The notes under the pieces are model-generated. The model was not told where the DNA came from. It did no database searches and saw only the letters and a program-made list of their open reading frames with translations. This document shows, one piece after another, positions 46,201 through 54,442 of a stretch of 64,000 nt of DNA. Origin of the DNA: Selaginella moellendorffii (lineage: Eukaryota > Plantae > Lycopodiophyta); NCBI RefSeq assembly GCF_000143415.4, contig NW_003314265.1, forward strand, positions 324,405 through 388,404, given 5' to 3'. The translations under genes were made by a program, and so were the position numbers. Every line of letters begins with the position of its first letter. Position 1 is the first letter of the stretch.

Positions 46201-49200
46201 TCTCGTCTGGAATCCCACCATAGCGACTCAGCAGCTACAAGACGCAGTGAACCTTTATGAGAGAATTGCGAAGTTCGAAGCTGCGGCAAGATGTTTGACG
46301 AAGATCAAAAACTTTAAGCAAGCTGGTAATTAATTCATGTAATCGTGATACGTAGCGATCGTGAATTACTAACGTTTCTGTCATTTCCAGGTGTATTGTA
46401 CAGGGACAAGTGCAATCCGTCGCGCTGGGAAAACGCTGCTCAATGTTTTGAACAAGCAAAGATTTATGATGAAGCAGCAGAAGCATATGCCATGGTAGAA
46501 GATTTTCAGAGTTGCTTATCCGCATGCCTGGCTGGAAAGCTGTTTGAGAAGGGGCTGAACTTTATCCGGGACCGAGAACAGCAAGATGCTTCATTCCTCA
46601 GCAATAAGTACGTGGTGAATCTCTTGAAGACCTCGGCGGAGCACTATCACAGAAAGAAGGACGTTGACAGGATGATGAAATTTGTTCACGCGTTTCCGGG
46701 CATTTCCATGAAGCGGGACTTTTTGAAGAGGCGTGACTATCTGGAGCAGCTTATGCAAGTGGAGTTCTTCTACATGAACTACGAAGAAGCTTCTCAGGTA
46801 GCCGAAGCGAAAGGAGATCTTATAGCCGCTGCAAAGTTCCTAGAACTAGCTGGACATCGAGCCGAAGGAGCTAGAAAAATCATCAAACACATGCAGCTGA
46901 AACTTCTATGGGCGAACAACAACCTGGGGTGGCCTTTGAGGCCTTTGGAAGATGAAAAGCTCGTCACTGAGGCTCACAGAATGGCAAAAGGGGATCCTCG
47001 AGCAGAAATCCAGCTTCGAGTCCTAAGAGATGACGACGACCTCTCGCTGTCAGATGTTTTCGAGAACTGGAAGCTGGCGAAAGACGACCCGACTATAAAC
47101 ATCATAGTGCTGCGTCAGCTCTTGGAGAAAGGTCTAGAGTTGGCTAAAGGTTCGACTTCGCTCGGGCTTCTTACTCTACAGGTTTTGGACAGGCCGTTGA
47201 GAACAGCTAGTGACATGACCAACACTCTGCAGTTTGTGGTCGCTGTTTGGAACACTTGGTTCCAGAAGATAAGCTCGCTGCTGAAGGCACTGGCAAAGAT
47301 CGAGAAAATTATTCCGCAAGGCGACGCACTTCTGGATTCTTGCTTGGAATTTATGGGCGTTACTCGGCACCATCTTCCCGGGCTGTGCATAGTGGAGGAC
47401 AGCATGGTTGACTGGCTGAAACGGGGTGGAGACTGGACCGTCGGCAGTGGAAAGGCACAGCTGAAAACGGAAAAGTTTCTGTCTCTAGCAACAGATTTTT
47501 GGCGGGGTCAGCTAGAGTCGACGAGCGCAATCTTCTGTGAAGTGCTGGAAAGCCACGCAGGCAATGCTGGTGGAGCCGAGAGCTGCCTGTCAGTGTTGAA
47601 GATTATGGACGTGGTCAGTAGCTTGGGGAAGTCCGAAACTCACGAAAGAAGACTTCGAAGTCTCAGGATGGAGCTTTTCCGGTGTTTATTCGTACGCCGA
47701 GGGAATACTCCCGTTAGCTTACGGGACCATCCCAAAGTTACTCCTCACCTGGACGCGCTTGCCAGAGACATTACAGCAGCGAGTGATTCGGTCGAAGAAA
47801 CAGTTATGCTACAGATTCTGGGACCTTATTTGAGGAATGGTCCCGGGCAGGATTTTATTGCCAACGAGTACTGCTACCACTTTGCGATGCCGATAAGCCA
47901 GTGTGCTCAAGGGCTGCACGACATCTTTAGCATGGAAGGCTTCCAGCATTATATCACTCCGTCGATGTTCATCTACATGCTGGAGCGAATACTTGTTTCT
48001 AGCACTGCGTGCTTATCACACATCGTGGAGGCAACGCTCCCGGAAAGCCTGGCTATGGAGTTTATGACGGGGTCTACGCAGGAAATTCTGTACACGCGGA
48101 TGTTGAGGATGGGCTGCTCCGTGGATAAATTTTGCAAGAGTGTTGGGACAAACTCTCTGGAAGTCATTCAGAAGATTTGCAGTTCTCTGCTACTCGGATA
48201 CCGCCTGGACAAGTGGTTGCTCGATATCCCAAAGTCAGAGGTAGTCTTTCGGATTATTCGAGTGCTCTTAACCATTTTCATGGAGTTTGAGAACCAGGCA
48301 GTGAACAGCCACATATTCCGAGATCTGAGGAGCTTGGTGACCCGGCAGTCTTCTGCGCTGGACCATCTTCTTCCGAGCTTGAGGCAGGGGCTGCAGTGCC
48401 TCTTCGAGACAGGTGCAAACTACAATCACTTCCGGATACTCTTCTGCCGGTTCATGATTGAATGCGGCGATCAGTTTCTGCTTCTGAGGCGGAGAGACAA
48501 ATTCAGGCATGGATTTAAGTCTCGGTTCCAGACTTATGTCAATGTGGAGCCGGAGCCGTGGAAGTTCAGCCTGGCATCACTGCAGCAGCCGGATGATTTG
48601 ATGCTGCAAACTGTGGATGCTGAGGAGGAGGAAGTTGATGAAACAACGGAGCTGAAACCTTCCGAGGTCGAGCTGACATTCGAGTGTCCGGAGCCAGAGA
48701 TGACGGCTCCCGCAAAAGAAGAAGCATTGTCTCCATGGTACCTGAAAGTTGGCGATTCGAAGCTCGGGTTTTTCGTGGTCTGGAGGCTGCTGAAAAAGCT
48801 GCAAGTTGCCAGAGAGAACTTGGTCCAGGATGACGAGTATGTCCGGGAAGCCAAAAACGCGTTTAGCACTATGGCTTGTAAAGACGACGGCTACGTTTCG
48901 TCATTCATCTCCGAAGTGTGTCCTCTAAAGGTCTGCGTACTTTCCTTTCTCTTTTTCCCTCCGGTTCTTTGTAACACTCTCCTGGCAGGCGGACTTGGTG
49001 AGTTTCGTGCTGGACATGGCTTCCGCGATTGAGATTCTGAAAGGCCGAACCTTTGCCGGTCAGGATGGGCAACTCAAGGCCGATCGAGACGACCTCGTGG
49101 AGAAGATGAACGACTTCAAGTGCGAATGCGAGGCTTTGTTGGAGCTTATGGATCCTAGGTGAGTGAAGTGTTTGCTTTGCTTGTATGGATGATCTATAAC

Positions 49201-49468
49201 TTTACAAACTCTCAGGCATGCCGACCATCAGAAGCAGGACTTGGATTGGCTACTTCTATCTGTCACAAATCCAGCAACAGAGAAACTAAGTTATGGCAGA
49301 TCCAAATTCAACCATCGCCTTAAAGACGTGCTCGGTGATGCTCTCCAGCGCAAAGAAACTATCTCCAATGAGCCAGCAAAGCCTTGCTCGTCCGCTACTA
49401 AGCCCGCGCCTAAGAAATCAAACAAGAAGAAAAAGTCCGGGAAGAAAGGGGGAAGAAAGAAGCAGTGA
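40217..49468 (+). CDS. TRANK1-like double SF1 helicase: ParB/Srx-like domain + Upf1/Sen1-like helicase + RelE-like segment + UvrD-like helicase + TPR; apparent lesion near 45640
   Basis: Helicase 1: [53 protein letters not shown]. Helicase 2: [42 protein letters not shown]. Followed by TPR-like helices and a basic C-terminal tail. Confidence 0.9.
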
Positions 49469-49550
49469 CTTAATGTTGATATATACATATTTCGTGTCTG
49501 TATAGGTAGTTTGATCGGAATTATCTATAATATACTTCCAACGAATTTTA

Positions 49551-49586
49551 TCAAACTGGCGCCACCTTGGGAATCACAAACAACTC

Positions 49587-49628
<42 letters not shown>

Positions 49629-51522
49629 GAAGAAGAAGAAGAAGAAGAAAGAATGGCTACCTGGTCGGGAAATTCGAGAGGTCGTTGCTTCCTGGAGAAT
49701 CGCTTGTTCCAGGTATCGACGACGACGCAGGCACAGGCATCACCCCAGATGTTAACGGACGTGCGAAACATCCCCAGCAGCCAGTCCACGGCAAAAAGGA
49801 CCGAAACGTCACCAATAAACTGGGGAAGATTCACAGCCTGGAGAAGAAAAGATCGAGAAAAAAAACCTTTGCATAGTCTTGCTTAAAGCTGGCTTGCCTG
49901 TAAAACTGTGATCATGGTCACCAGAGCGGAGCTGGGAATGGACGCGGAGCCAACAGCGGCGAGAGTGGCAGTGATGGCGATGACGAAGAGGCTGCTCACA
50001 GGGAGATGGATTCCATGAGCCTGGATGGAGGACGAAGAGAAAAAAGTGAGTGAGAGAGAGATGGAGGACGAAGAGAAAAAAGTGAGAGAGAGAGAGAGAG
50101 AGTGAGAGAGAGAAACCTGGCAGATAAAAATTGCTGAGACTGCCTCGTAGAGCGCGGCACCGTCGCGGTTAATGTTGGTTCCTAGAGGAATCACAAACTG
50201 GACGATGCTCTGGTCGCAGCCGTGTTCTCCGCCGCATTGCATTGTCACTGGCATTGTGGCGGCGCTGGAGGAAGTTCCCAGTCCCATGCACAGCGCTGGC
50301 AAAAATGATCTGGTAGATACGCAGCAAATCGCTTTAAACCGGCTTGTGATCTTCAAGAGCTCAAAGAACCGAGCTACTTACTTGAAAACTTTGAGGGGAT
50401 TTTGCCTCGACAGGAGGAAGACTGTGAGTGGCAGCACCAGCGTGGAATGGATGAAGAATCCGCCCAGCACCGTCGCCATGTAAAAGCCGAGAGATTTGAG
50501 AAGATGGACGGCGTTGCATGCCTTGAGAATGGTGCCTGCGATGAGCGACGCAACTCCAACGGGCGTGAACATGACCACTACAAAGATCTGATCGGGAGAA
50601 AAAAACAATGTAAGATTGTGATCAATCGAAGACACGAGAAAGTTACGATTTTTATCAAGATGGTGTTGCAGAGCTCGATGAGATGAACTAGAGGCTCGGC
50701 TCGCTCACCTGGAGGTACACAAAGGAGAGAGTTACGAGCTTTTTTCCTTGACAGGTTTAGAGATTTTCTCACCGAATGTATTGGTGGCGAAAGCGAAGAC
50801 AATGGCGAAAGTCATGACTCCCAAATAGTTTGGCTTCGCAGCGGCCGCGACGATGTTTGTAGGAAGCAAGTCGCGGCCAATCTCGAGCAGGGAATCCACA
50901 GTCCCAGCTGCTGCCTTTGGTGTGCTAGAAAAAAAAAATTTCAAGTAAACAGCATGAAAGTATCACTCTCACTCTGTGGGGGAAGTTCCATTGCGAGTGG
51001 CACACTTTGTGAAACCCGAGTCGTCAAATGGCTTGTCTCTCCCAGGCTTGATCACCGACACCATGACGATTCCCAAAACCACGGCAAGCATCATCGACAG
51101 TAGATAATACAGTAGAGACCACTTGGTGATACGGCCAACTCTACATTTTTGCCAAGAAAGAAATCGAGCTACATCACAGGAAAAATATCATACCCACTGG
51201 TTGTGTGTCTCAAGCTGAACACTCCAGACATCAATGCGAGCATAATCAATGGCAGAACCAGGGCCTGTAAAGCTCGGATGAAAAGCTCTCCAGGATACCC
51301 TTGAAAGCAAAAAGGAAAAGAGATCGAGCTTTTAGGACAAACGACGAGGAGATCTTTTCTCTTATGATACATACCCAGGAGCTCCACTGTTAGAGCAGAG
51401 GGATGCGAATTGTAAAGCCCAGCTCCCAGCGCGATTCCCACAAGCACTCCCAGCAGCGTCCACCACACCAGCATCTCCATCCGGAACGCCTTCTTCTTAA
51501 ACCGCGAGAAGAGCCCCGCCAT
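49551..51522 (-). CDS. Dicarboxylate/amino acid:cation symporter (DAACS/SLC1, GltPh/EAAT family)
   Basis: GYPGELFIRALQALVLPLI, HP1 serine motif LGTSSSAATMP, TM7 PLGTNINRDGAALYE, HP2 AAVGSASIP and TM8 AVDWLLGMFRTSVNIWGD. Confidence 0.92.
49590..49650. repeat. Compound (GA)n(GAA)n microsatellite in the last DAACS intron
   Basis: agagagag... run followed directly by gaagaagaag... Confidence 0.95.
50022..50113. repeat. Short tandem duplication plus (GA)n in a DAACS intron
   Basis: gatggaggacgaagagaaaaaagtgag occurs twice about 36 bp apart and is followed by GA runs. Confidence 0.8.
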
Positions 51523-52557
51523 GGCGGCCAACAAACAAACAAAGAATGGCGCTCTCTTCCCAGAAGTTTGGAGAAGTGTGGAGTTCGCTCCCTCCCTCGC
51601 AGAAGAGATTCTTGGCTGCCCTATGAGCTACTTAAGGAACTCCATAGCCAGACTTCCGTAGACGCATTTGGCGGGCTCGGATTTGGACCCGAGGTGACTG
51701 CAAATCTTTTCTTCGTTTGTGGTTTTTTTTTCTCTTTGCTTTCTGCCACTTTGTTCGGTCCCCAGAGGAGCTCTGACCTCCAGGCCTACTAAGACGAGCA
51801 CAGTGTTGCGAGCTCGACATGATACACAGCATCACGCAAACTTGATGGTTGAGTTCCTGAGGTTTGGAAATGCAATGTTGGCTTTTTGTATGGAAAAACA
51901 ATTCACTGCCTTTTGTCAATGTCGATTTGTAATGCAAACCATGGGAGCATATCACCGACCATGCGTGGTAATTAGCACAGTGGTAATCCGTAGGCGCATA
52001 TCTAGGTCTGATTTATATGGGAAAACTTTAAAGCTTAGAACACTGGTGAAAAGTGATCTTTACATTGACAAGAAACTTAAAATCTCTTGATACCTTGAGA
52101 AAGCTTTTAACATGGTTTGGGGTTTGCCATCCAAAACTACTTTGGCAGCTATTTGACCATTTAGAGCTGTCTTGACTCTCGAACCTTCAAAAAAAAGGGG
52201 AAAAGGGAAGAAAGATCCCCCAGAACCTACATAGTGCTTTCTCAACGCACACACCACTTCACGGCTTTGTTTAAAAATGCTTTAACAAAGATTTTGTTTT
52301 TGAGAAATTTTCCGTTAAGCAGGAATGGCTGTTAGCATACGAGTCCATGCAGGAGGCTCCCCTGGAGCATTTCCCAGAAGTTTGGCTCCGCTGAAACGTT
52401 TACTCCCCCTTAAAAACGTTCCTTCCCACCGTCATTGGTTAGGGCAGTCAAACATAGACACACGAGGAAGCCTTCGTTCGAAGAATTTTGCATGGAAAAG
52501 CCTTCTCGTTACTGGTACTTAAATCCCTGCATCCTTCGTTCCTTCTCGAGAGAAGCG

Positions 52558-54442
52558 ATGGAGCTTTTACTGCTGTCCTGGAATGCTCTTTACCTCCTCG
52601 CGTTTCTACTCTCTTTCTGGCTGATCTACCGTAAGTTCTACAACTCCCAAGGATCATCCACGATCAAACTCCCGGCGGGAAGCCATGGCTGGCCTCTTGT
52701 CGGAGAATCTCTCTCTCTCTTCCAGGGATCCCCTCTAGACTTCCTCACCACTCGACGCAAGAGGTTCTCCCAAGTTGACTTTCGCTTAGATCTTGATTTA
52801 ATGAAGTTTGTGACCGATTTACAGATTTGGAGGAGTTTTCTCGAGTAACTTGCTTGGATCTCCCACCATTGTCACAACAACAGTAGAGGCAGCCAAGTTC
52901 TTCCTCAGCTGTGCTGACTGTGGTCCCTCAGGCTTGTTTGGCCGATTGTTTGGGCCGGACTCTATAAGCCAAGCCGTCGGGAGTGACCATGCGCTCTACC
53001 GGAGAATCATGTTGGGGATGATGGTTCCAGAGGTGCTCAAACACCATGTCGAGAAGATCGATAACTTGGCTCAGGAGATTCTAGAGTCGTGGGGATCGAA
53101 GAAGACGGTATCGGTTATGGAAGAAACTGTCAAGGTCTGATCACATCGTACGCCAGGTTGATCGCTTGATCTGATTATAAACATTTGACTTGCCAGTTTA
53201 GCTATTGTACGGTGATTGGATTCGTGTGCCAGAAACTGCTGCCCACCACTCCGGAGACGATCGATCTCATGCGAGACGTCCAGGCCATAGAGACGGGGCT
53301 GCTCCAGTTTCCAATCGACATACCCTTCTCACCTTATCACAAAGCATTGCAGGTTTGTGGCTGATAAATATAATCTTTCTAGTTCTGGATCTATTGTGAT
53401 TCGATCAGGCCAGGGCAAGGCTCCACACATTCTTGGATGGGCTCATCAACGAGAGGAGGGCACAAGTAGCTGCCAAGGACGAGACACACAAAGATGCATT
53501 GGGCGAGTTTGTCACGCACAAAGATGACAAGGTTGGAACCCTCTCCAATCAACAGGTGGAAGACAATCTCATGGCACTGTTGTTTGGAGGCCACCACACT
53601 ACAGCTCTGGCTCTCCTGTGGCTGATCAAATACTTACATGAGAATCCACAAGCTTTCAAGGAAGTGGAGGTATTATTATTATTATTATTATTATTAAACT
53701 GTTGTTTTGAATTTATCTTGATTTCCAGGAAGAGCAAAGACAAATCGTTCTTGAGAAAGGCTCCACAAAGTATAAATTAACATGGGAAGACACAAAGATG
53801 ATGCCAGCCACTCTAAGGGTTAGACGGAGTTCCACTTATTTTTATATTGAATTTAATTGGAGTGTTTTTGCAGGCTGTCCACGAGACTCTGAGGCTTTCT
53901 AATGTTGTGGGGCTGGTGACACGTAAAATCACCAAGGACATCAGCTACAATGGTTTGATTACATGTGATTGAAGCTAATTCCAATCGTTCTCTTGGTGTT
54001 ATACAGGTTATATTTTGCCCAAAGATTGGATGGTTCATGTCCATATGTCAGCAATCCACTTAGATGAGAGCATTTATCGCAATGCAACAAGATTTGATTC
54101 ATCCAGATTTAAAGTATGGCATTTGTCATGTTTATACTTACCAAAACCTTTTTATATCTTCCATCAGGTCCCAGCTAAAACTGGCACATTTATTCCATTT
54201 GGCTCTGGACAAAGAACATGCCCAGGAAGTGCACTAGCTAAGTTAGAGCTATGCGTTTTCATACACAGGCTTATCACAAAATACAGGTACTTCCTTTTCC
54301 TCCATTTTCTTGCCATTTATACTCAAACATTATTGTAAAACACTGTAGATGGGAGCCAGTGAATCCAAATAGTAAAACAAGCTACTGGCCAATGCCCACA
54401 GTGAATGATGGATACCTCATAGAAGTTATGTCCATCCAGTAA
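52558..54442 (+). CDS. Cytochrome P450, CYP85 clan
   Basis: N-terminal membrane anchor, LPAGSHGWPLVGES, I-helix LLFGGHHTT, ExxR (ETLR) and heme motif PFGSGQRTCPG. The intron-rich structure is typical of the CYP85 clan. Confidence 0.92.
53671..53696. repeat. (TAT)n microsatellite in a P450 intron
   Basis: tattattattattattattattatta. Confidence 0.9.

What the first reader, a model, noticed from the sequence alone, without database searches (positions are those of the whole stretch)
49745..50175. SLC1/DAACS transporter with rewired ion-coupling and substrate sites (NMDG->NRDG; TM8 Asp->Gly)
Seen: TM7 reads INRDGA (Arg codon at 50165-50167) and TM8 reads AVDWLLGMFRTSVNIWGD (Gly codon at 49772-49774). 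Established: GltPh/EAATs have NMDGT, whose Met (GltPh M311) lies at the Na2/substrate coupling site. TM8 D394 binds the substrate amino group and is replaced by a small residue in DctA dicarboxylate transporters. Equivalents of R397, T398, N401 and D405 are kept here. To my knowledge Arabidopsis has no SLC1 member. Inference: this is a dicarboxylate rather than Glu/Asp transporter, and the Arg may act as a built-in cation that changes stoichiometry. It would be an uncharacterised transport system of seed-free plants.
Basis: partly seen in the sequence, partly recalled or inferred. Interest (0 to 1): 0.7.

Follow-up and report, generated by a model that had tools for sequence, protein, structure and literature searches.

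The report
Green-lineage SLC1 transporter with rewired site
This is an intact, expressed Selaginella gene for a glutamate-transporter-family (SLC1) carrier whose ion and substrate pocket carries changes (Met to Arg, Asp to Gly and others) conserved from green algae to ferns but not found in seed plants, so it probably moves something other than amino acids, and no paper on it turned up in the library I searched.

Summary
On the minus strand, codon CGC 50167-50165 is the Arg of I-N-R-D-G-A, and GGG 49774-49772 is the Gly of DWLLGMFRT. HMMER alignments to solved structures place them at GltPh M311 and at EAAT3 D444 (GltPh D394).

The gene has 10 exons (CDS 51522-49551) and encodes 449 aa. Its product is identical to Selaginella moellendorffii SELMODRAFT_438697. 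Spliced contigs from four studies confirm every intron.

The substitutions are not private. All 63 NRDG sequences fetched belong to the green lineage: trebouxiophytes, Klebsormidium, Mesotaenium, liverworts, mosses, lycophytes and ferns. In the 226-sequence alignment, all 35 NRDG rows that reach TM8 have Gly (32) or Cys/Ala/Ser there. All but one of the 182 NM/NL-type rows that reach it keep Asp.

The clade is monophyletic (SH-aLRT 100), so this is a single origin. It sits inside an algal SLC1 group that is sister to animal EAAT/ASCT. No seed plant appears among the best 120 hits.

Further invariant clade-specific changes hit the Na2 site (T308N), the Na3 site (S93M) and the EAAT-type TM8 Arg (to Met). 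N310, D312, R397, T398, N401 and D405 are kept.

Function is inferred only: probably a dicarboxylate-type anion carrier with altered cation coupling. I found no paper on it. The scan noted the same motif on another piece of this genome.

The parts
49444..51908 (-). Transcribed region of the SLC1 gene (SELMODRAFT_438697). The 5' UTR reaches about 51730-51908 and the 3' UTR about 49444.
   Evidence: Spliced contigs of 1646-1671 nt from 4 studies (table 8).
51375..51522 (-). Exon 1, with ATG at 51522-51520; encodes TM1.
   Evidence: joint 51298|51374, cut +1; Pfam SDF on the ORF.
51194..51299 (-). Exon 2 (TM2, YPGELFIRALQALVLPLI).
50973..51140 (-). Exon 3 (TM3). S100 lies at 51097-51095 and M101 at 51094-51092, equivalent to EAAT3 T101/T102 and GltPh T92/S93 (Na3 site).
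50773..50924 (-). Exon 4 (TM4 region).
50647..50708 (-). Exon 5.
   Evidence: joints 50587|50647 and 50703|50768, cut +5.
50382..50587 (-). Exon 6 (TM5-TM6).
50117..50309 (-). Exon 7: HP1 (GTSSSAATMP) and TM7 with GTNINRDGA. T325 is at 50179-50177, N326 at 50176-50174 and R329 at 50167-50165.
50165..50167 (-). Arg codon (CGC) at the Met position of NMDG (GltPh M311).
   Evidence: Arg is invariant in the 35 clade rows of the alignment and in all 63 NRDG sequences fetched. The algal locus L004 uses the synonymous codon CGG.
49898..50020 (-). Exon 8 (HP2, ...GSASIPSSALVTM...). It is followed by a GC-AG intron at 49838-49897.
   Evidence: joint 49835|49896, both = 5.
49661..49837 (-). Exon 9 (TM8): DWLLGMFRTSVNIWGD. 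G408 is at 49774-49772, M409 at 49771-49769, R411 at 49765-49763, N415 at 49753-49751 and D419 at 49741-49739.
49772..49774 (-). Gly codon (GGG) at the position of the amino-group-binding Asp (GltPh D394, EAAT3 D444).
   Evidence: The clade has Gly in 32 of 35 sequences and Cys/Ala/Ser in the other 3.
49551..49565 (-). Exon 10 coding part: the last four codons V-A-P-V plus the stop TGA. It is reached by splicing out 49566-49660.
   Evidence: X5 record 3, pieces 49444-49563 and 49659-49835; loose ends at 49567. The resulting protein is identical to P0181.

Best explanation
Shown: window 49551-51522 (minus strand) is an intact, spliced and expressed 10-exon gene of Selaginella moellendorffii. 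It encodes a complete 449-aa SLC1/DAACS (PF00375) elevator-type transporter. The protein belongs to a monophyletic, green-lineage-specific subfamily found in trebouxiophyte and streptophyte algae, bryophytes, lycophytes and ferns. The subfamily is defined by a fixed set of changes around the ion and substrate pocket (GltPh numbering): S93M at Na3; A307T, T308N and M311R at TM7a and the NMD loop, i.e. at Na2 and the substrate contact; D394 to Gly (rarely Ala/Ser/Cys); and loss of the EAAT-type Arg that follows D394 (to Met). N310, D312, Y317, the EAAT proton-carrier Glu, R397, T398, N401 and D405 are retained. Inferred mechanism: the carboxylate that receives the substrate's alpha-amino group is gone, while the residues that bind two carboxylates (R397, N401) remain. 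The substrate is therefore most likely an organic anion without an alpha-amino group, such as a C4/C5 dicarboxylate (malate, succinate, fumarate or 2-oxoglutarate). The invariant Arg on the NMD loop places a tethered positive charge where the Met normally touches both Na2 and the substrate. The neighbouring T308N change and the Na3 S93M change suggest that cation coupling was remodelled at the same time. That would mean fewer Na+ ions, or H+-coupled or Na+-independent operation, which would suit H+-energised plant and freshwater-algal membranes. The short, acidic N-termini show no transit-peptide character, which points to the plasma membrane or an endomembrane.
For: Gene model and expression: with identity to P0181. 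Family and fold: SDF 1-387/387, E 5e-100; AF2 pLDDT 88.7, TM7 broken at 328-329; EAAT2/3, ASCT2 and GltPh, TMq about 0.8. Site equivalences. Conservation. These give 63 NRDG sequences; every one that reaches TM8 has a small residue there, and 181 of the 182 NM/NL-type sequences that reach it keep Asp. Arg and Gly are encoded by different synonymous codons in an alga. Single origin and position in the family: (clade 100*, nested in an algal SLC1 group at 99*, sister to animals at 95*). DctA control: Ser at the D394 position. Literature: D394 binds the amino group and sets amino-acid versus dicarboxylate specificity; M311 contacts the substrate; the NMD loop serves Na1, Na2 and Na3 (PMC12668577). 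Basic residues act as Na+ surrogates in LaINDY, ApcT and CaiT (PMC11782487).
Against: No transport or binding data exist for any member. All the changes arose on one long stem branch (0.91 substitutions per site), so their co-occurrence is a single event and is no statistical evidence of physical coupling. DctA achieves dicarboxylate specificity without any Arg at position 311, so the Arg is not required for that specificity. D405, D312, N310 and a hydroxyl at position 92 are kept, so Na1 and Na3 may still bind Na+. The bacterial H+ signature (hydrophobic residue at 92, M311L, D405N) is absent. The tools did not expose model coordinates, so I could not measure where the Arg side chain points. 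Localisation is judged by eye from the N-termini only.
Confidence: 0.5

Rival explanations
1. The Arg is a substrate ligand rather than an ion surrogate. The clade would then carry an anion with an extra negative or H-bond-accepting group where amino acids have NH3+. Candidates are a tricarboxylate (citrate, isocitrate), a 2-oxo or 2-hydroxy acid bound through that group, or a sulfo- or phospho-acid. Cation coupling at Na1 and Na3 would be largely conserved.
For: The M311 side chain makes van der Waals contact with the substrate (PMC12668577). The net change in the pocket is +2 (loss of Asp, gain of Arg). D405, D312 and N310 are retained (invariant columns).
Against: T308N and S93M are invariant changes at Na2 and Na3 ligand positions, and a pure change of substrate does not explain them. 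The EAAT-type TM8 Arg was lost at the same time, so the net charge change in the wider pocket is smaller than +2.
Confidence: 0.2
2. It is still an acidic or neutral amino-acid transporter, as the automatic names 'excitatory amino acid transporter 4-like' and 'Amino acid transporter' suggest. The amino group would be held by backbone carbonyls and T398 alone.
For: Overall it is closest to EAAT/ASCT among solved structures. R397, T398, N401 and the EAAT Glu are kept. The database names appear.
Against: In this data set 181 of 182 non-clade sequences keep Asp at position 394; the remaining one has Asn. E. coli DctA, added as a control, has Ser there. The literature assigns amino-acid versus dicarboxylate specificity to D394. 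The database names are automatic transfers.
Confidence: 0.12
3. It is not a concentrative symporter. It would be an obligate exchanger or uniporter, with the tethered Arg letting the empty carrier or gate close without Na+. Alternatively it would act mainly through the family's uncoupled anion conductance, on an endomembrane.
For: Precedents exist in LaINDY (an Na+-independent exchanger with Arg and His at the Na+ sites) and CaiT. The proximal Arg at both known positions (GltPh R276 in HP1, the EAAT TM8 site) is absent, and that residue influences dynamics and K+ coupling.
Against: No direct evidence. The EAAT proton and K+-linked Glu and D405 are retained.
Confidence: 0.13
4. It is a degenerate or inactive copy whose substitutions destroyed the site.
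For: Two residues regarded as hallmark positions are changed.
Against: The ORF is intact and properly spliced mRNA is found in four studies. Arg is invariant and Gly near-invariant across lineages from chlorophytes to ferns, with synonymous codon differences. The AF2 model is confident.
Confidence: 0.03

Closest known systems
Animal EAAT/ASCT transporters (SLC1A1-7)
   Same: They are the best sequence and fold matches among solved structures: 34-37% identity and TMq about 0.8. They share the HP1 SSS motif, the N-x-D-G loop that breaks TM7, the 'LYEA' Glu (EAAT3 E374), the TM8 D-W...R-T..N...G-D frame, and the animal-plus-algal clade in the tree.
   Different: The Met of NMDG is Arg. D444 (EAAT3) is Gly. 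The following R445 is Met. T102 (Na3) is Met. The Thr before I-N-M-D is Asn. The protein is shorter (449 aa) and lacks the long TM4 loop.
Bacterial C4-dicarboxylate transporter DctA (DAACS)
   Same: It has a small residue (Ser) in place of the amino-group-binding Asp, and retains the TM8 Arg and Asn. That is the basis for predicting a substrate without an amino group.
   Different: DctA has NLDG and D405N, the H+-type signature. The plant protein has NRDG and keeps D405. It scores 191 bits against the NCBIfam DctA cut-off of 513 and lies far from DctA in the tree.
GltPh/GltTk archaeal Na+/aspartate symporters
   Same: They provide the reference for site numbering. N310, D312, Y317, R397, T398, N401 and D405 are shared, and the fold matches with TMq about 0.8.
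   Different: The plant protein differs by M311R, D394G, S93M and T308N, and has no R276-type Arg in HP1.
Na+-independent carriers with a basic residue at a Na+ site (LaINDY R159/H392, ApcT K158, CaiT R262)
   Same: They share the concept of a tethered positive charge standing in for a coupling cation. LaINDY is also an elevator-type dicarboxylate carrier (PMC11782487).
   Different: They belong to different families and folds (DASS, APC/LeuT-fold). I am not aware of any such case reported for SLC1, and here the idea is only inferred.
Algal SLC1 relatives with NMNG or NMDG plus Asp-Arg in TM8
   Same: They are the nearest relatives in the tree (99*). They share an HP2 of the 'A-I-P-S-A-G-L-V-T-M' type and have similar length.
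   Different: They keep the Met and the TM8 Asp-Arg pair. Many have Asn in place of D312.

Membership tests
SLC1 / DAACS (Pfam PF00375, Sodium:dicarboxylate symporter family) | Full-length match to the family HMM above the gathering score | tested here: met
   335.7 bits (cut-off 27.9), residues 18-429 against profile 1-387/387; five exon ORFs match individually.
SLC1 / DAACS | Elevator fold with HP1, a broken TM7, HP2 and TM8 | tested here: met
   AF2 pLDDT 88.7, helices 284-293/300-310 (HP1), 314-327/330-346 (TM7a/b), 353-367/376-387 (HP2), 391-437 (TM8). Foldseek probability 1.00 to EAAT2/3, ASCT2 and GltPh.
SLC1 / DAACS | Conserved N-M-D-G-T loop in TM7 | tested here: not met
   The loop is N-R-D-G-A. 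N, D and G are kept, Met is Arg and Thr is Ala. H+-coupled E. coli GltP and DctA have N-L-D-G, so the Met is not absolute in the family.
SLC1 amino-acid transporters (EAAT, ASCT, GltPh, GltP) | Asp in TM8 that binds the substrate alpha-amino group (GltPh D394, EAAT3 D444) | tested here: not met
   Gly408. Among non-clade sequences 181 of 182 have Asp.
EAAT (acidic amino-acid) subfamily | TM8 Arg that binds the side-chain carboxylate (R447), plus T448, N451 and D455 | tested here: met
   R411, T412, N415 and D419.
EAAT subfamily | Proximal Arg next to D444 (EAAT3 R445, GltPh M395 position) and the proton-carrier Glu (E374) | tested here: inconclusive
   The Arg is absent (M409) and the Glu is present (E336). 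So one of the two features is met.
Bacterial DctA C4-dicarboxylate transporters | NCBIfam DctA model above its cut-off | tested here: not met
   191.4 bits against cut-off 513 (NF002461) and 173.4 against 570 (NF009587).
Bacterial DctA C4-dicarboxylate transporters | Non-acidic small residue at the D394 position with R397 retained | tested here: met
   Gly408 and R411 here; E. coli DctA has Ser380 and R383.
H+-coupled bacterial DAACS (GltP/DctA type) | Signature of a hydrophobic residue at T/S92, M311L and D405N (PMC12668577) | tested here: not met
   S100, R329 and D419.
Any SLC1 transport activity (substrate, coupling ion) | Measured transport | not testable with these tools
   No functional data were found in the paper library.

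The most novel reading that the evidence does not exclude
A roughly billion-year-old (my own estimate for the chlorophyte-streptophyte split) green-lineage SLC1 subfamily turned a Na+-coupled amino-acid transporter scaffold into a Na+-independent or H+-coupled dicarboxylate carrier. It would have done so by tethering an Arg into the Na2/substrate junction (M311R with T308N), disabling Na3 (S93M) and deleting the amino-group acceptor (D394G). That would be a route to new coupling and specificity distinct from the bacterial GltP/DctA route, and the carrier was then lost in seed plants.
Probability: 0.3. Interest if true: 0.75.

Novelty: new variant of a known kind. Interest (0 to 1): 0.6.

Why it matters
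SLC1 transporters are the textbook system for ion-coupled elevator transport. The NMD loop and D394 are treated as near-invariant hallmarks. This clade offers a natural, deeply conserved variant in which the Met that links Na2, Na1/Na3 and the substrate is a permanent cation, and the amino-group acceptor is absent. That makes it a ready-made experiment on how coupling stoichiometry and substrate class are set, complementary to the ancestral-reconstruction work on bacterial H+-coupled members.

For plant biology it marks an unstudied organic-anion (or other) transport system. The system is present in algae, bryophytes, lycophytes and ferns, and apparently lost in seed plants. It can be tested directly in Marchantia and Physcomitrium.

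Tried and rejected
1. The ORF reading of the 3' end gives a 28-aa Ser/Leu-rich tail to the stop at 49574. I rejected it because the RNA contigs splice 49661 to 49565, so the protein ends ...FPDQ-VAPV.

2. The idea that the changes are private to this copy or inactivating is rejected by the conservation.

3. A regex hit suggested an NRDG in a planctomycete (Novipirellula). It was an artefact (an upstream 'NRTGS'); the true loop is NMDG.

4. Perfect co-occurrence of Arg with the small TM8 residue looked like evidence of coupling. I rejected that reading because the tree shows a single origin.

5. The JGI automatic name 'TcyP L-cystine uptake' on fragment P0001 is not supported. E. coli TcyP has neither motif, and NCBIfam gives DctA, GltP and SstT as the nearest models, all below their cut-offs.

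6. Literature searches for NRDG, DAACS or EAAT in plants and algae returned nothing relevant.

7. Exons were searched by reference. In a local script I joined the exons only to test identity with the database protein P0181, without printing the sequence. After that, P0181 served as the reference.

8. The geometry of the Arg side chain could not be measured, because the model coordinates are not exposed by the tools.

Full report
OBSERVATION

Reading the minus strand gives att-aac-cgc-gac-ggt-gcc = I-N-R-D-G-A, with the Arg codon at 50167-50165. It also gives ...gac-tgg-ctg-ctg-ggg-atg-ttt-cgc-acg... = DWLLGMFRT, with the Gly codon at 49774-49772.

HMMER against all PDB chains aligns this TM7 stretch to EAAT1 'INMDGTALYEA'. 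It also aligns without gaps to GltPh 268-331, which puts the Arg on M311. The TM8 exon aligns to EAAT3 'AVDWLLDRFRTMVNVLGDA' in native numbering, so Gly corresponds to D444. It aligns to GltTk 389-423 as well, so Gly corresponds to D398, which is GltPh D394.

GENE MODEL AND EXPRESSION

Five minus-strand ORFs between 49574 and 51534 each match Pfam SDF. Splice sites read by hand gave nine exons.

I then laid Logan contigs of four runs from four different studies on 49000-52000. Spliced contigs of 1646-1671 nt confirm every predicted intron. These include a GC-AG intron (49838-49897) and one further 3' intron (49566-49660) that I had left open.

The gene therefore has 10 exons. The CDS runs 51522-49551 and encodes 449 aa ending ...FPDQVAPV. 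No base differs from the window at the Arg or Gly codons in any of the four contig sets (table 3).

In a local script the spliced translation is identical to database protein P0181, 'hypothetical protein SELMODRAFT_438697 [Selaginella moellendorffii]', called 'Amino acid transporter' by UniRef. The window is thus S. moellendorffii, and I used P0181 as the reference from that point.

FAMILY AND FOLD

- P0181 matches PF00375 end to end (18-429 against 1-387/387, E 5e-100).
- An AlphaFold2 model built on a 51-sequence alignment has pLDDT 88.7 and pTM 0.87. It shows HP1, a TM7 broken exactly at N328-R329, HP2 and a long TM8.
- Foldseek finds EAAT2, EAAT3, ASCT2 and GltPh (probability 1.00). TMq is about 0.8 to inward-facing states.
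- Against NCBIfam it stays far below the cut-offs of bacterial DctA (191 against 513 bits) and GltP (180 against 638).

ARE THE SUBSTITUTIONS PRIVATE? NO.

A word search with the TM7-HP2 piece returned 27 fragments that all read N-[IV]-N-R-D-G. Those reaching TM8 read DW..GM.RT. Controls with NMDG had Asp.

The exhaustive representative search and a word search with the full-length Diphasiastrum protein P0033 gave full-length members from:

- lycophytes: Selaginella, Diphasiastrum
- ferns: Adiantum (two species), Ceratopteris
- mosses: Ceratodon, Physcomitrium
- liverworts: Marchantia (two species), Riccia (two species), Calypogeia
- streptophyte algae: Klebsormidium, Mesotaenium
- trebouxiophytes: Coccomyxa, Elliptochloris

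No seed plant is among the best 120 hits. After the green sequences the list drops to animals and bacteria at 38% identity or less.

In a 226-sequence MAFFT alignment:

- All 35 NRDG sequences that reach TM8 have Gly (32) or Cys, Ala or Ser (one each) at the D394 position.
- All but one of the 182 NM/NL-type sequences that reach TM8 have Asp there; the exception has Asn.
- E. coli DctA, added as a control, has Ser.

An uncultured alga from ENA metagenomes has the same pair, encoded by CGG and GGC instead of CGC and GGG. Altogether 63 NRDG sequences were fetched.

PHYLOGENY

I built a 64-sequence IQ-TREE (LG+C20+F+G4 PMSF, quick search).

- The NRDG clade is monophyletic (SH-aLRT 100) on a long stem of 0.91 substitutions per site.
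- It is nested in a group of algal or protist SLC1 proteins that keep NM(D/N)G plus Asp-Arg (99).
- That group is sister to animal EAAT/ASCT (95).
- Prokaryotic relatives and E. coli GltP and DctA lie outside.

The Arg state needs one change on the tree. An apparent second case was a regex artefact. Consequently the perfect Arg/Gly co-occurrence is one historical event, not replicated covariation. What argues for function is the subsequent invariance across the chlorophyte-streptophyte divide.

WHAT ELSE CHANGED

A scan for clade-specific, conserved differences (with segments shown and numbering anchored) gives, in GltPh numbering:

- S93M (M101, 100% in the clade; others Thr or Ser), a Na3 ligand position
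- T92S (conservative)
- A307T and T308N (T325 and N326, 100%; others 89% Ala and 97% Thr), the turn that supplies a Na2 carbonyl
- M311R (R329, 100%)
- D394G (G408)
- the residue after D394, which is Arg in EAATs and in the algal, animal and nearest prokaryotic relatives, is Met (M409)
- L282M in HP1, plus a few scaffold positions

Retained are N310, D312, G313, Y317, the EAAT proton-carrier Glu (E336), R397, T398, N401 and D405. T314 is Ala, Thr or Ser within the clade. HP1 has Ser at the GltPh R276 position. The clade therefore lacks the 'proximal arginine' at both known locations (GltPh HP1 and EAAT TM8; PMC7780239), and its only new Arg is on the NMD loop.

ESTABLISHED KNOWLEDGE USED

PMC12668577 supplies four points:

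- The NMD loop coordinates Na1, Na2, Na3 and the substrate.
- The M311 side chain points into the pocket and touches the substrate.
- R397 binds the side-chain carboxylate, and D394 binds the amino group. [quoted passage not shown]
- H+-coupled bacterial members carry a hydrophobic residue at T/S92, M311L and D405N.

E. coli GltP and DctA, read from the annotated genome, show NLDG and a G-N ending. DctA shows Ser at position 394.

PMC11782487 summarises basic residues that stand in for Na+: LaINDY R159/H392, ApcT K158 and CaiT R262.

INTERPRETATION

Shown:

- The gene is intact, expressed and a complete SLC1.
- It defines a conserved green-lineage subfamily.
- The pocket residues listed above are fixed in that subfamily.

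Inferred:

1. The subfamily lacks D394 but keeps R397 and N401. Its substrate is therefore most likely a carboxylate without an alpha-amino group, of the C4/C5 dicarboxylate type. This follows the DctA logic.
2. The invariant Arg places a tethered cation at the junction of Na2 and the substrate. T308N lies one turn away on the same face, and S93M is at Na3. Together they suggest that cation coupling was remodelled. The Arg could act as a Na2 surrogate, as the charge that replaces the substrate's own NH3+, or as both. Reduced Na+ stoichiometry or H+ coupling would suit plant and freshwater-algal membranes. However, D405, D312 and a hydroxyl at position 92 remain, so Na1 and Na3 may persist.
3. 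N-termini in the clade are short and rich in acidic residues, with no transit-peptide character. That suggests the plasma membrane or an endomembrane.

I put about 0.5 on this composite reading. The rivals are:

- Arg as a ligand for an extra anionic or polar group of the substrate, with coupling conserved (0.2)
- an exchanger, uniporter or channel-like role (0.13)
- still an amino-acid transporter (0.12)
- inactive (0.03)

NOVELTY

Family membership is already annotated automatically ('Amino acid transporter', 'excitatory amino acid transporter 4-like', 'Sodium:dicarboxylate symporter'). Nine full-text searches found no paper that describes SLC1/DAACS members of plants or green algae, the NRDG loop, or the loss of D394 in a eukaryotic member. 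The Selaginella amino-acid transporter inventory does not mention the family.

I class it as a new variant of a known kind. The scan's index shows the same motif noted on another piece of this genome (s1-394819). That piece is probably the paralogue or the second haplotype. The paralogue P0198 (SELMODRAFT_403919) reads NRDGS with Cys-Ala in TM8.

LIMITS

- There are no functional data.
- The tree is a quick search.
- The claim 'absent from seed plants' rests on the best-120 list of one word search.
- The side-chain geometry of the Arg could not be measured.
- Organism names of the RNA runs were coded.

Noticed in passing
window 50021-50116 (minus strand): Intron 7 is in frame and free of stops. 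It consists of a CT-rich unit duplicated in tandem ('ctctctcactcacttttttctcttcgtcctccat...'). A plain ORF reading (49883-50356) therefore runs straight through it and would insert about 32 spurious residues between TM7 and HP2. The RNA contigs splice it out.
   Followed up: yes
window 49838-49897 (minus strand): A GC-AG intron (donor cag|gcaagc) lies between the HP2 and TM8 exons. Spliced contigs of four studies confirm it.
   Followed up: yes
window 49566-49660 (minus strand): The last intron is full of (CTT)n and (CT)n microsatellite. It separates the final four codons (VAPV, stop). Without RNA evidence the ORF would be read on into a false Ser/Leu-rich tail.
   Followed up: yes
window 49037-49492: A separate 402-nt spliced contig (intron 49157-49213, GT..AG on the plus strand) covers the 3' end of the neighbouring plus-strand gene, the large ORF 46345-49032 that other notes of the scan call a helicase. 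It overlaps the SLC1 3' UTR (which reaches about 49444) by about 50 nt, so the two genes look convergent with overlapping 3' ends.
   Followed up: partly
P0034-P0047, P0036, P0038, P0221 and others (algal and protist relatives): The nearest relatives of the clade often read N-M-N-G (35 sequences), and sometimes N-M-T/S/A/G-G. So the Na1/Na3 ligand D312 is replaced by Asn while Met and the TM8 Asp-Arg pair are kept. This is a second, independent rewiring of the ion sites in algal SLC1 proteins.
   Followed up: partly
P0198, P0214, P0217 (Selaginella paralogue, other scaffolds): The paralogue SELMODRAFT_403919 keeps NRDG but has Cys-Ala instead of Gly-Met in TM8. The RefSeq models 'EAAT4 isoform X1' and 'neutral amino acid transporter B(0) isoform X3' of that paralogue diverge after TM7 and lack TM8, so they are probably mis-spliced predictions.
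   Followed up: partly
P0219, P0234 (Selaginella): Two annotated Selaginella proteins combine PF25072 with only the C-terminal part of SDF (DWLLGSIRTSVNIW). They may be chimeric gene models or gene fragments.
   Followed up: no
window 52435-54100 (plus strand): ORF pieces upstream of the SLC1 promoter look by eye like a multi-exon cytochrome P450 (for example '...KLPAGSHGWPLVGESLSLF...'). I did not check this with any tool.
   Followed up: no
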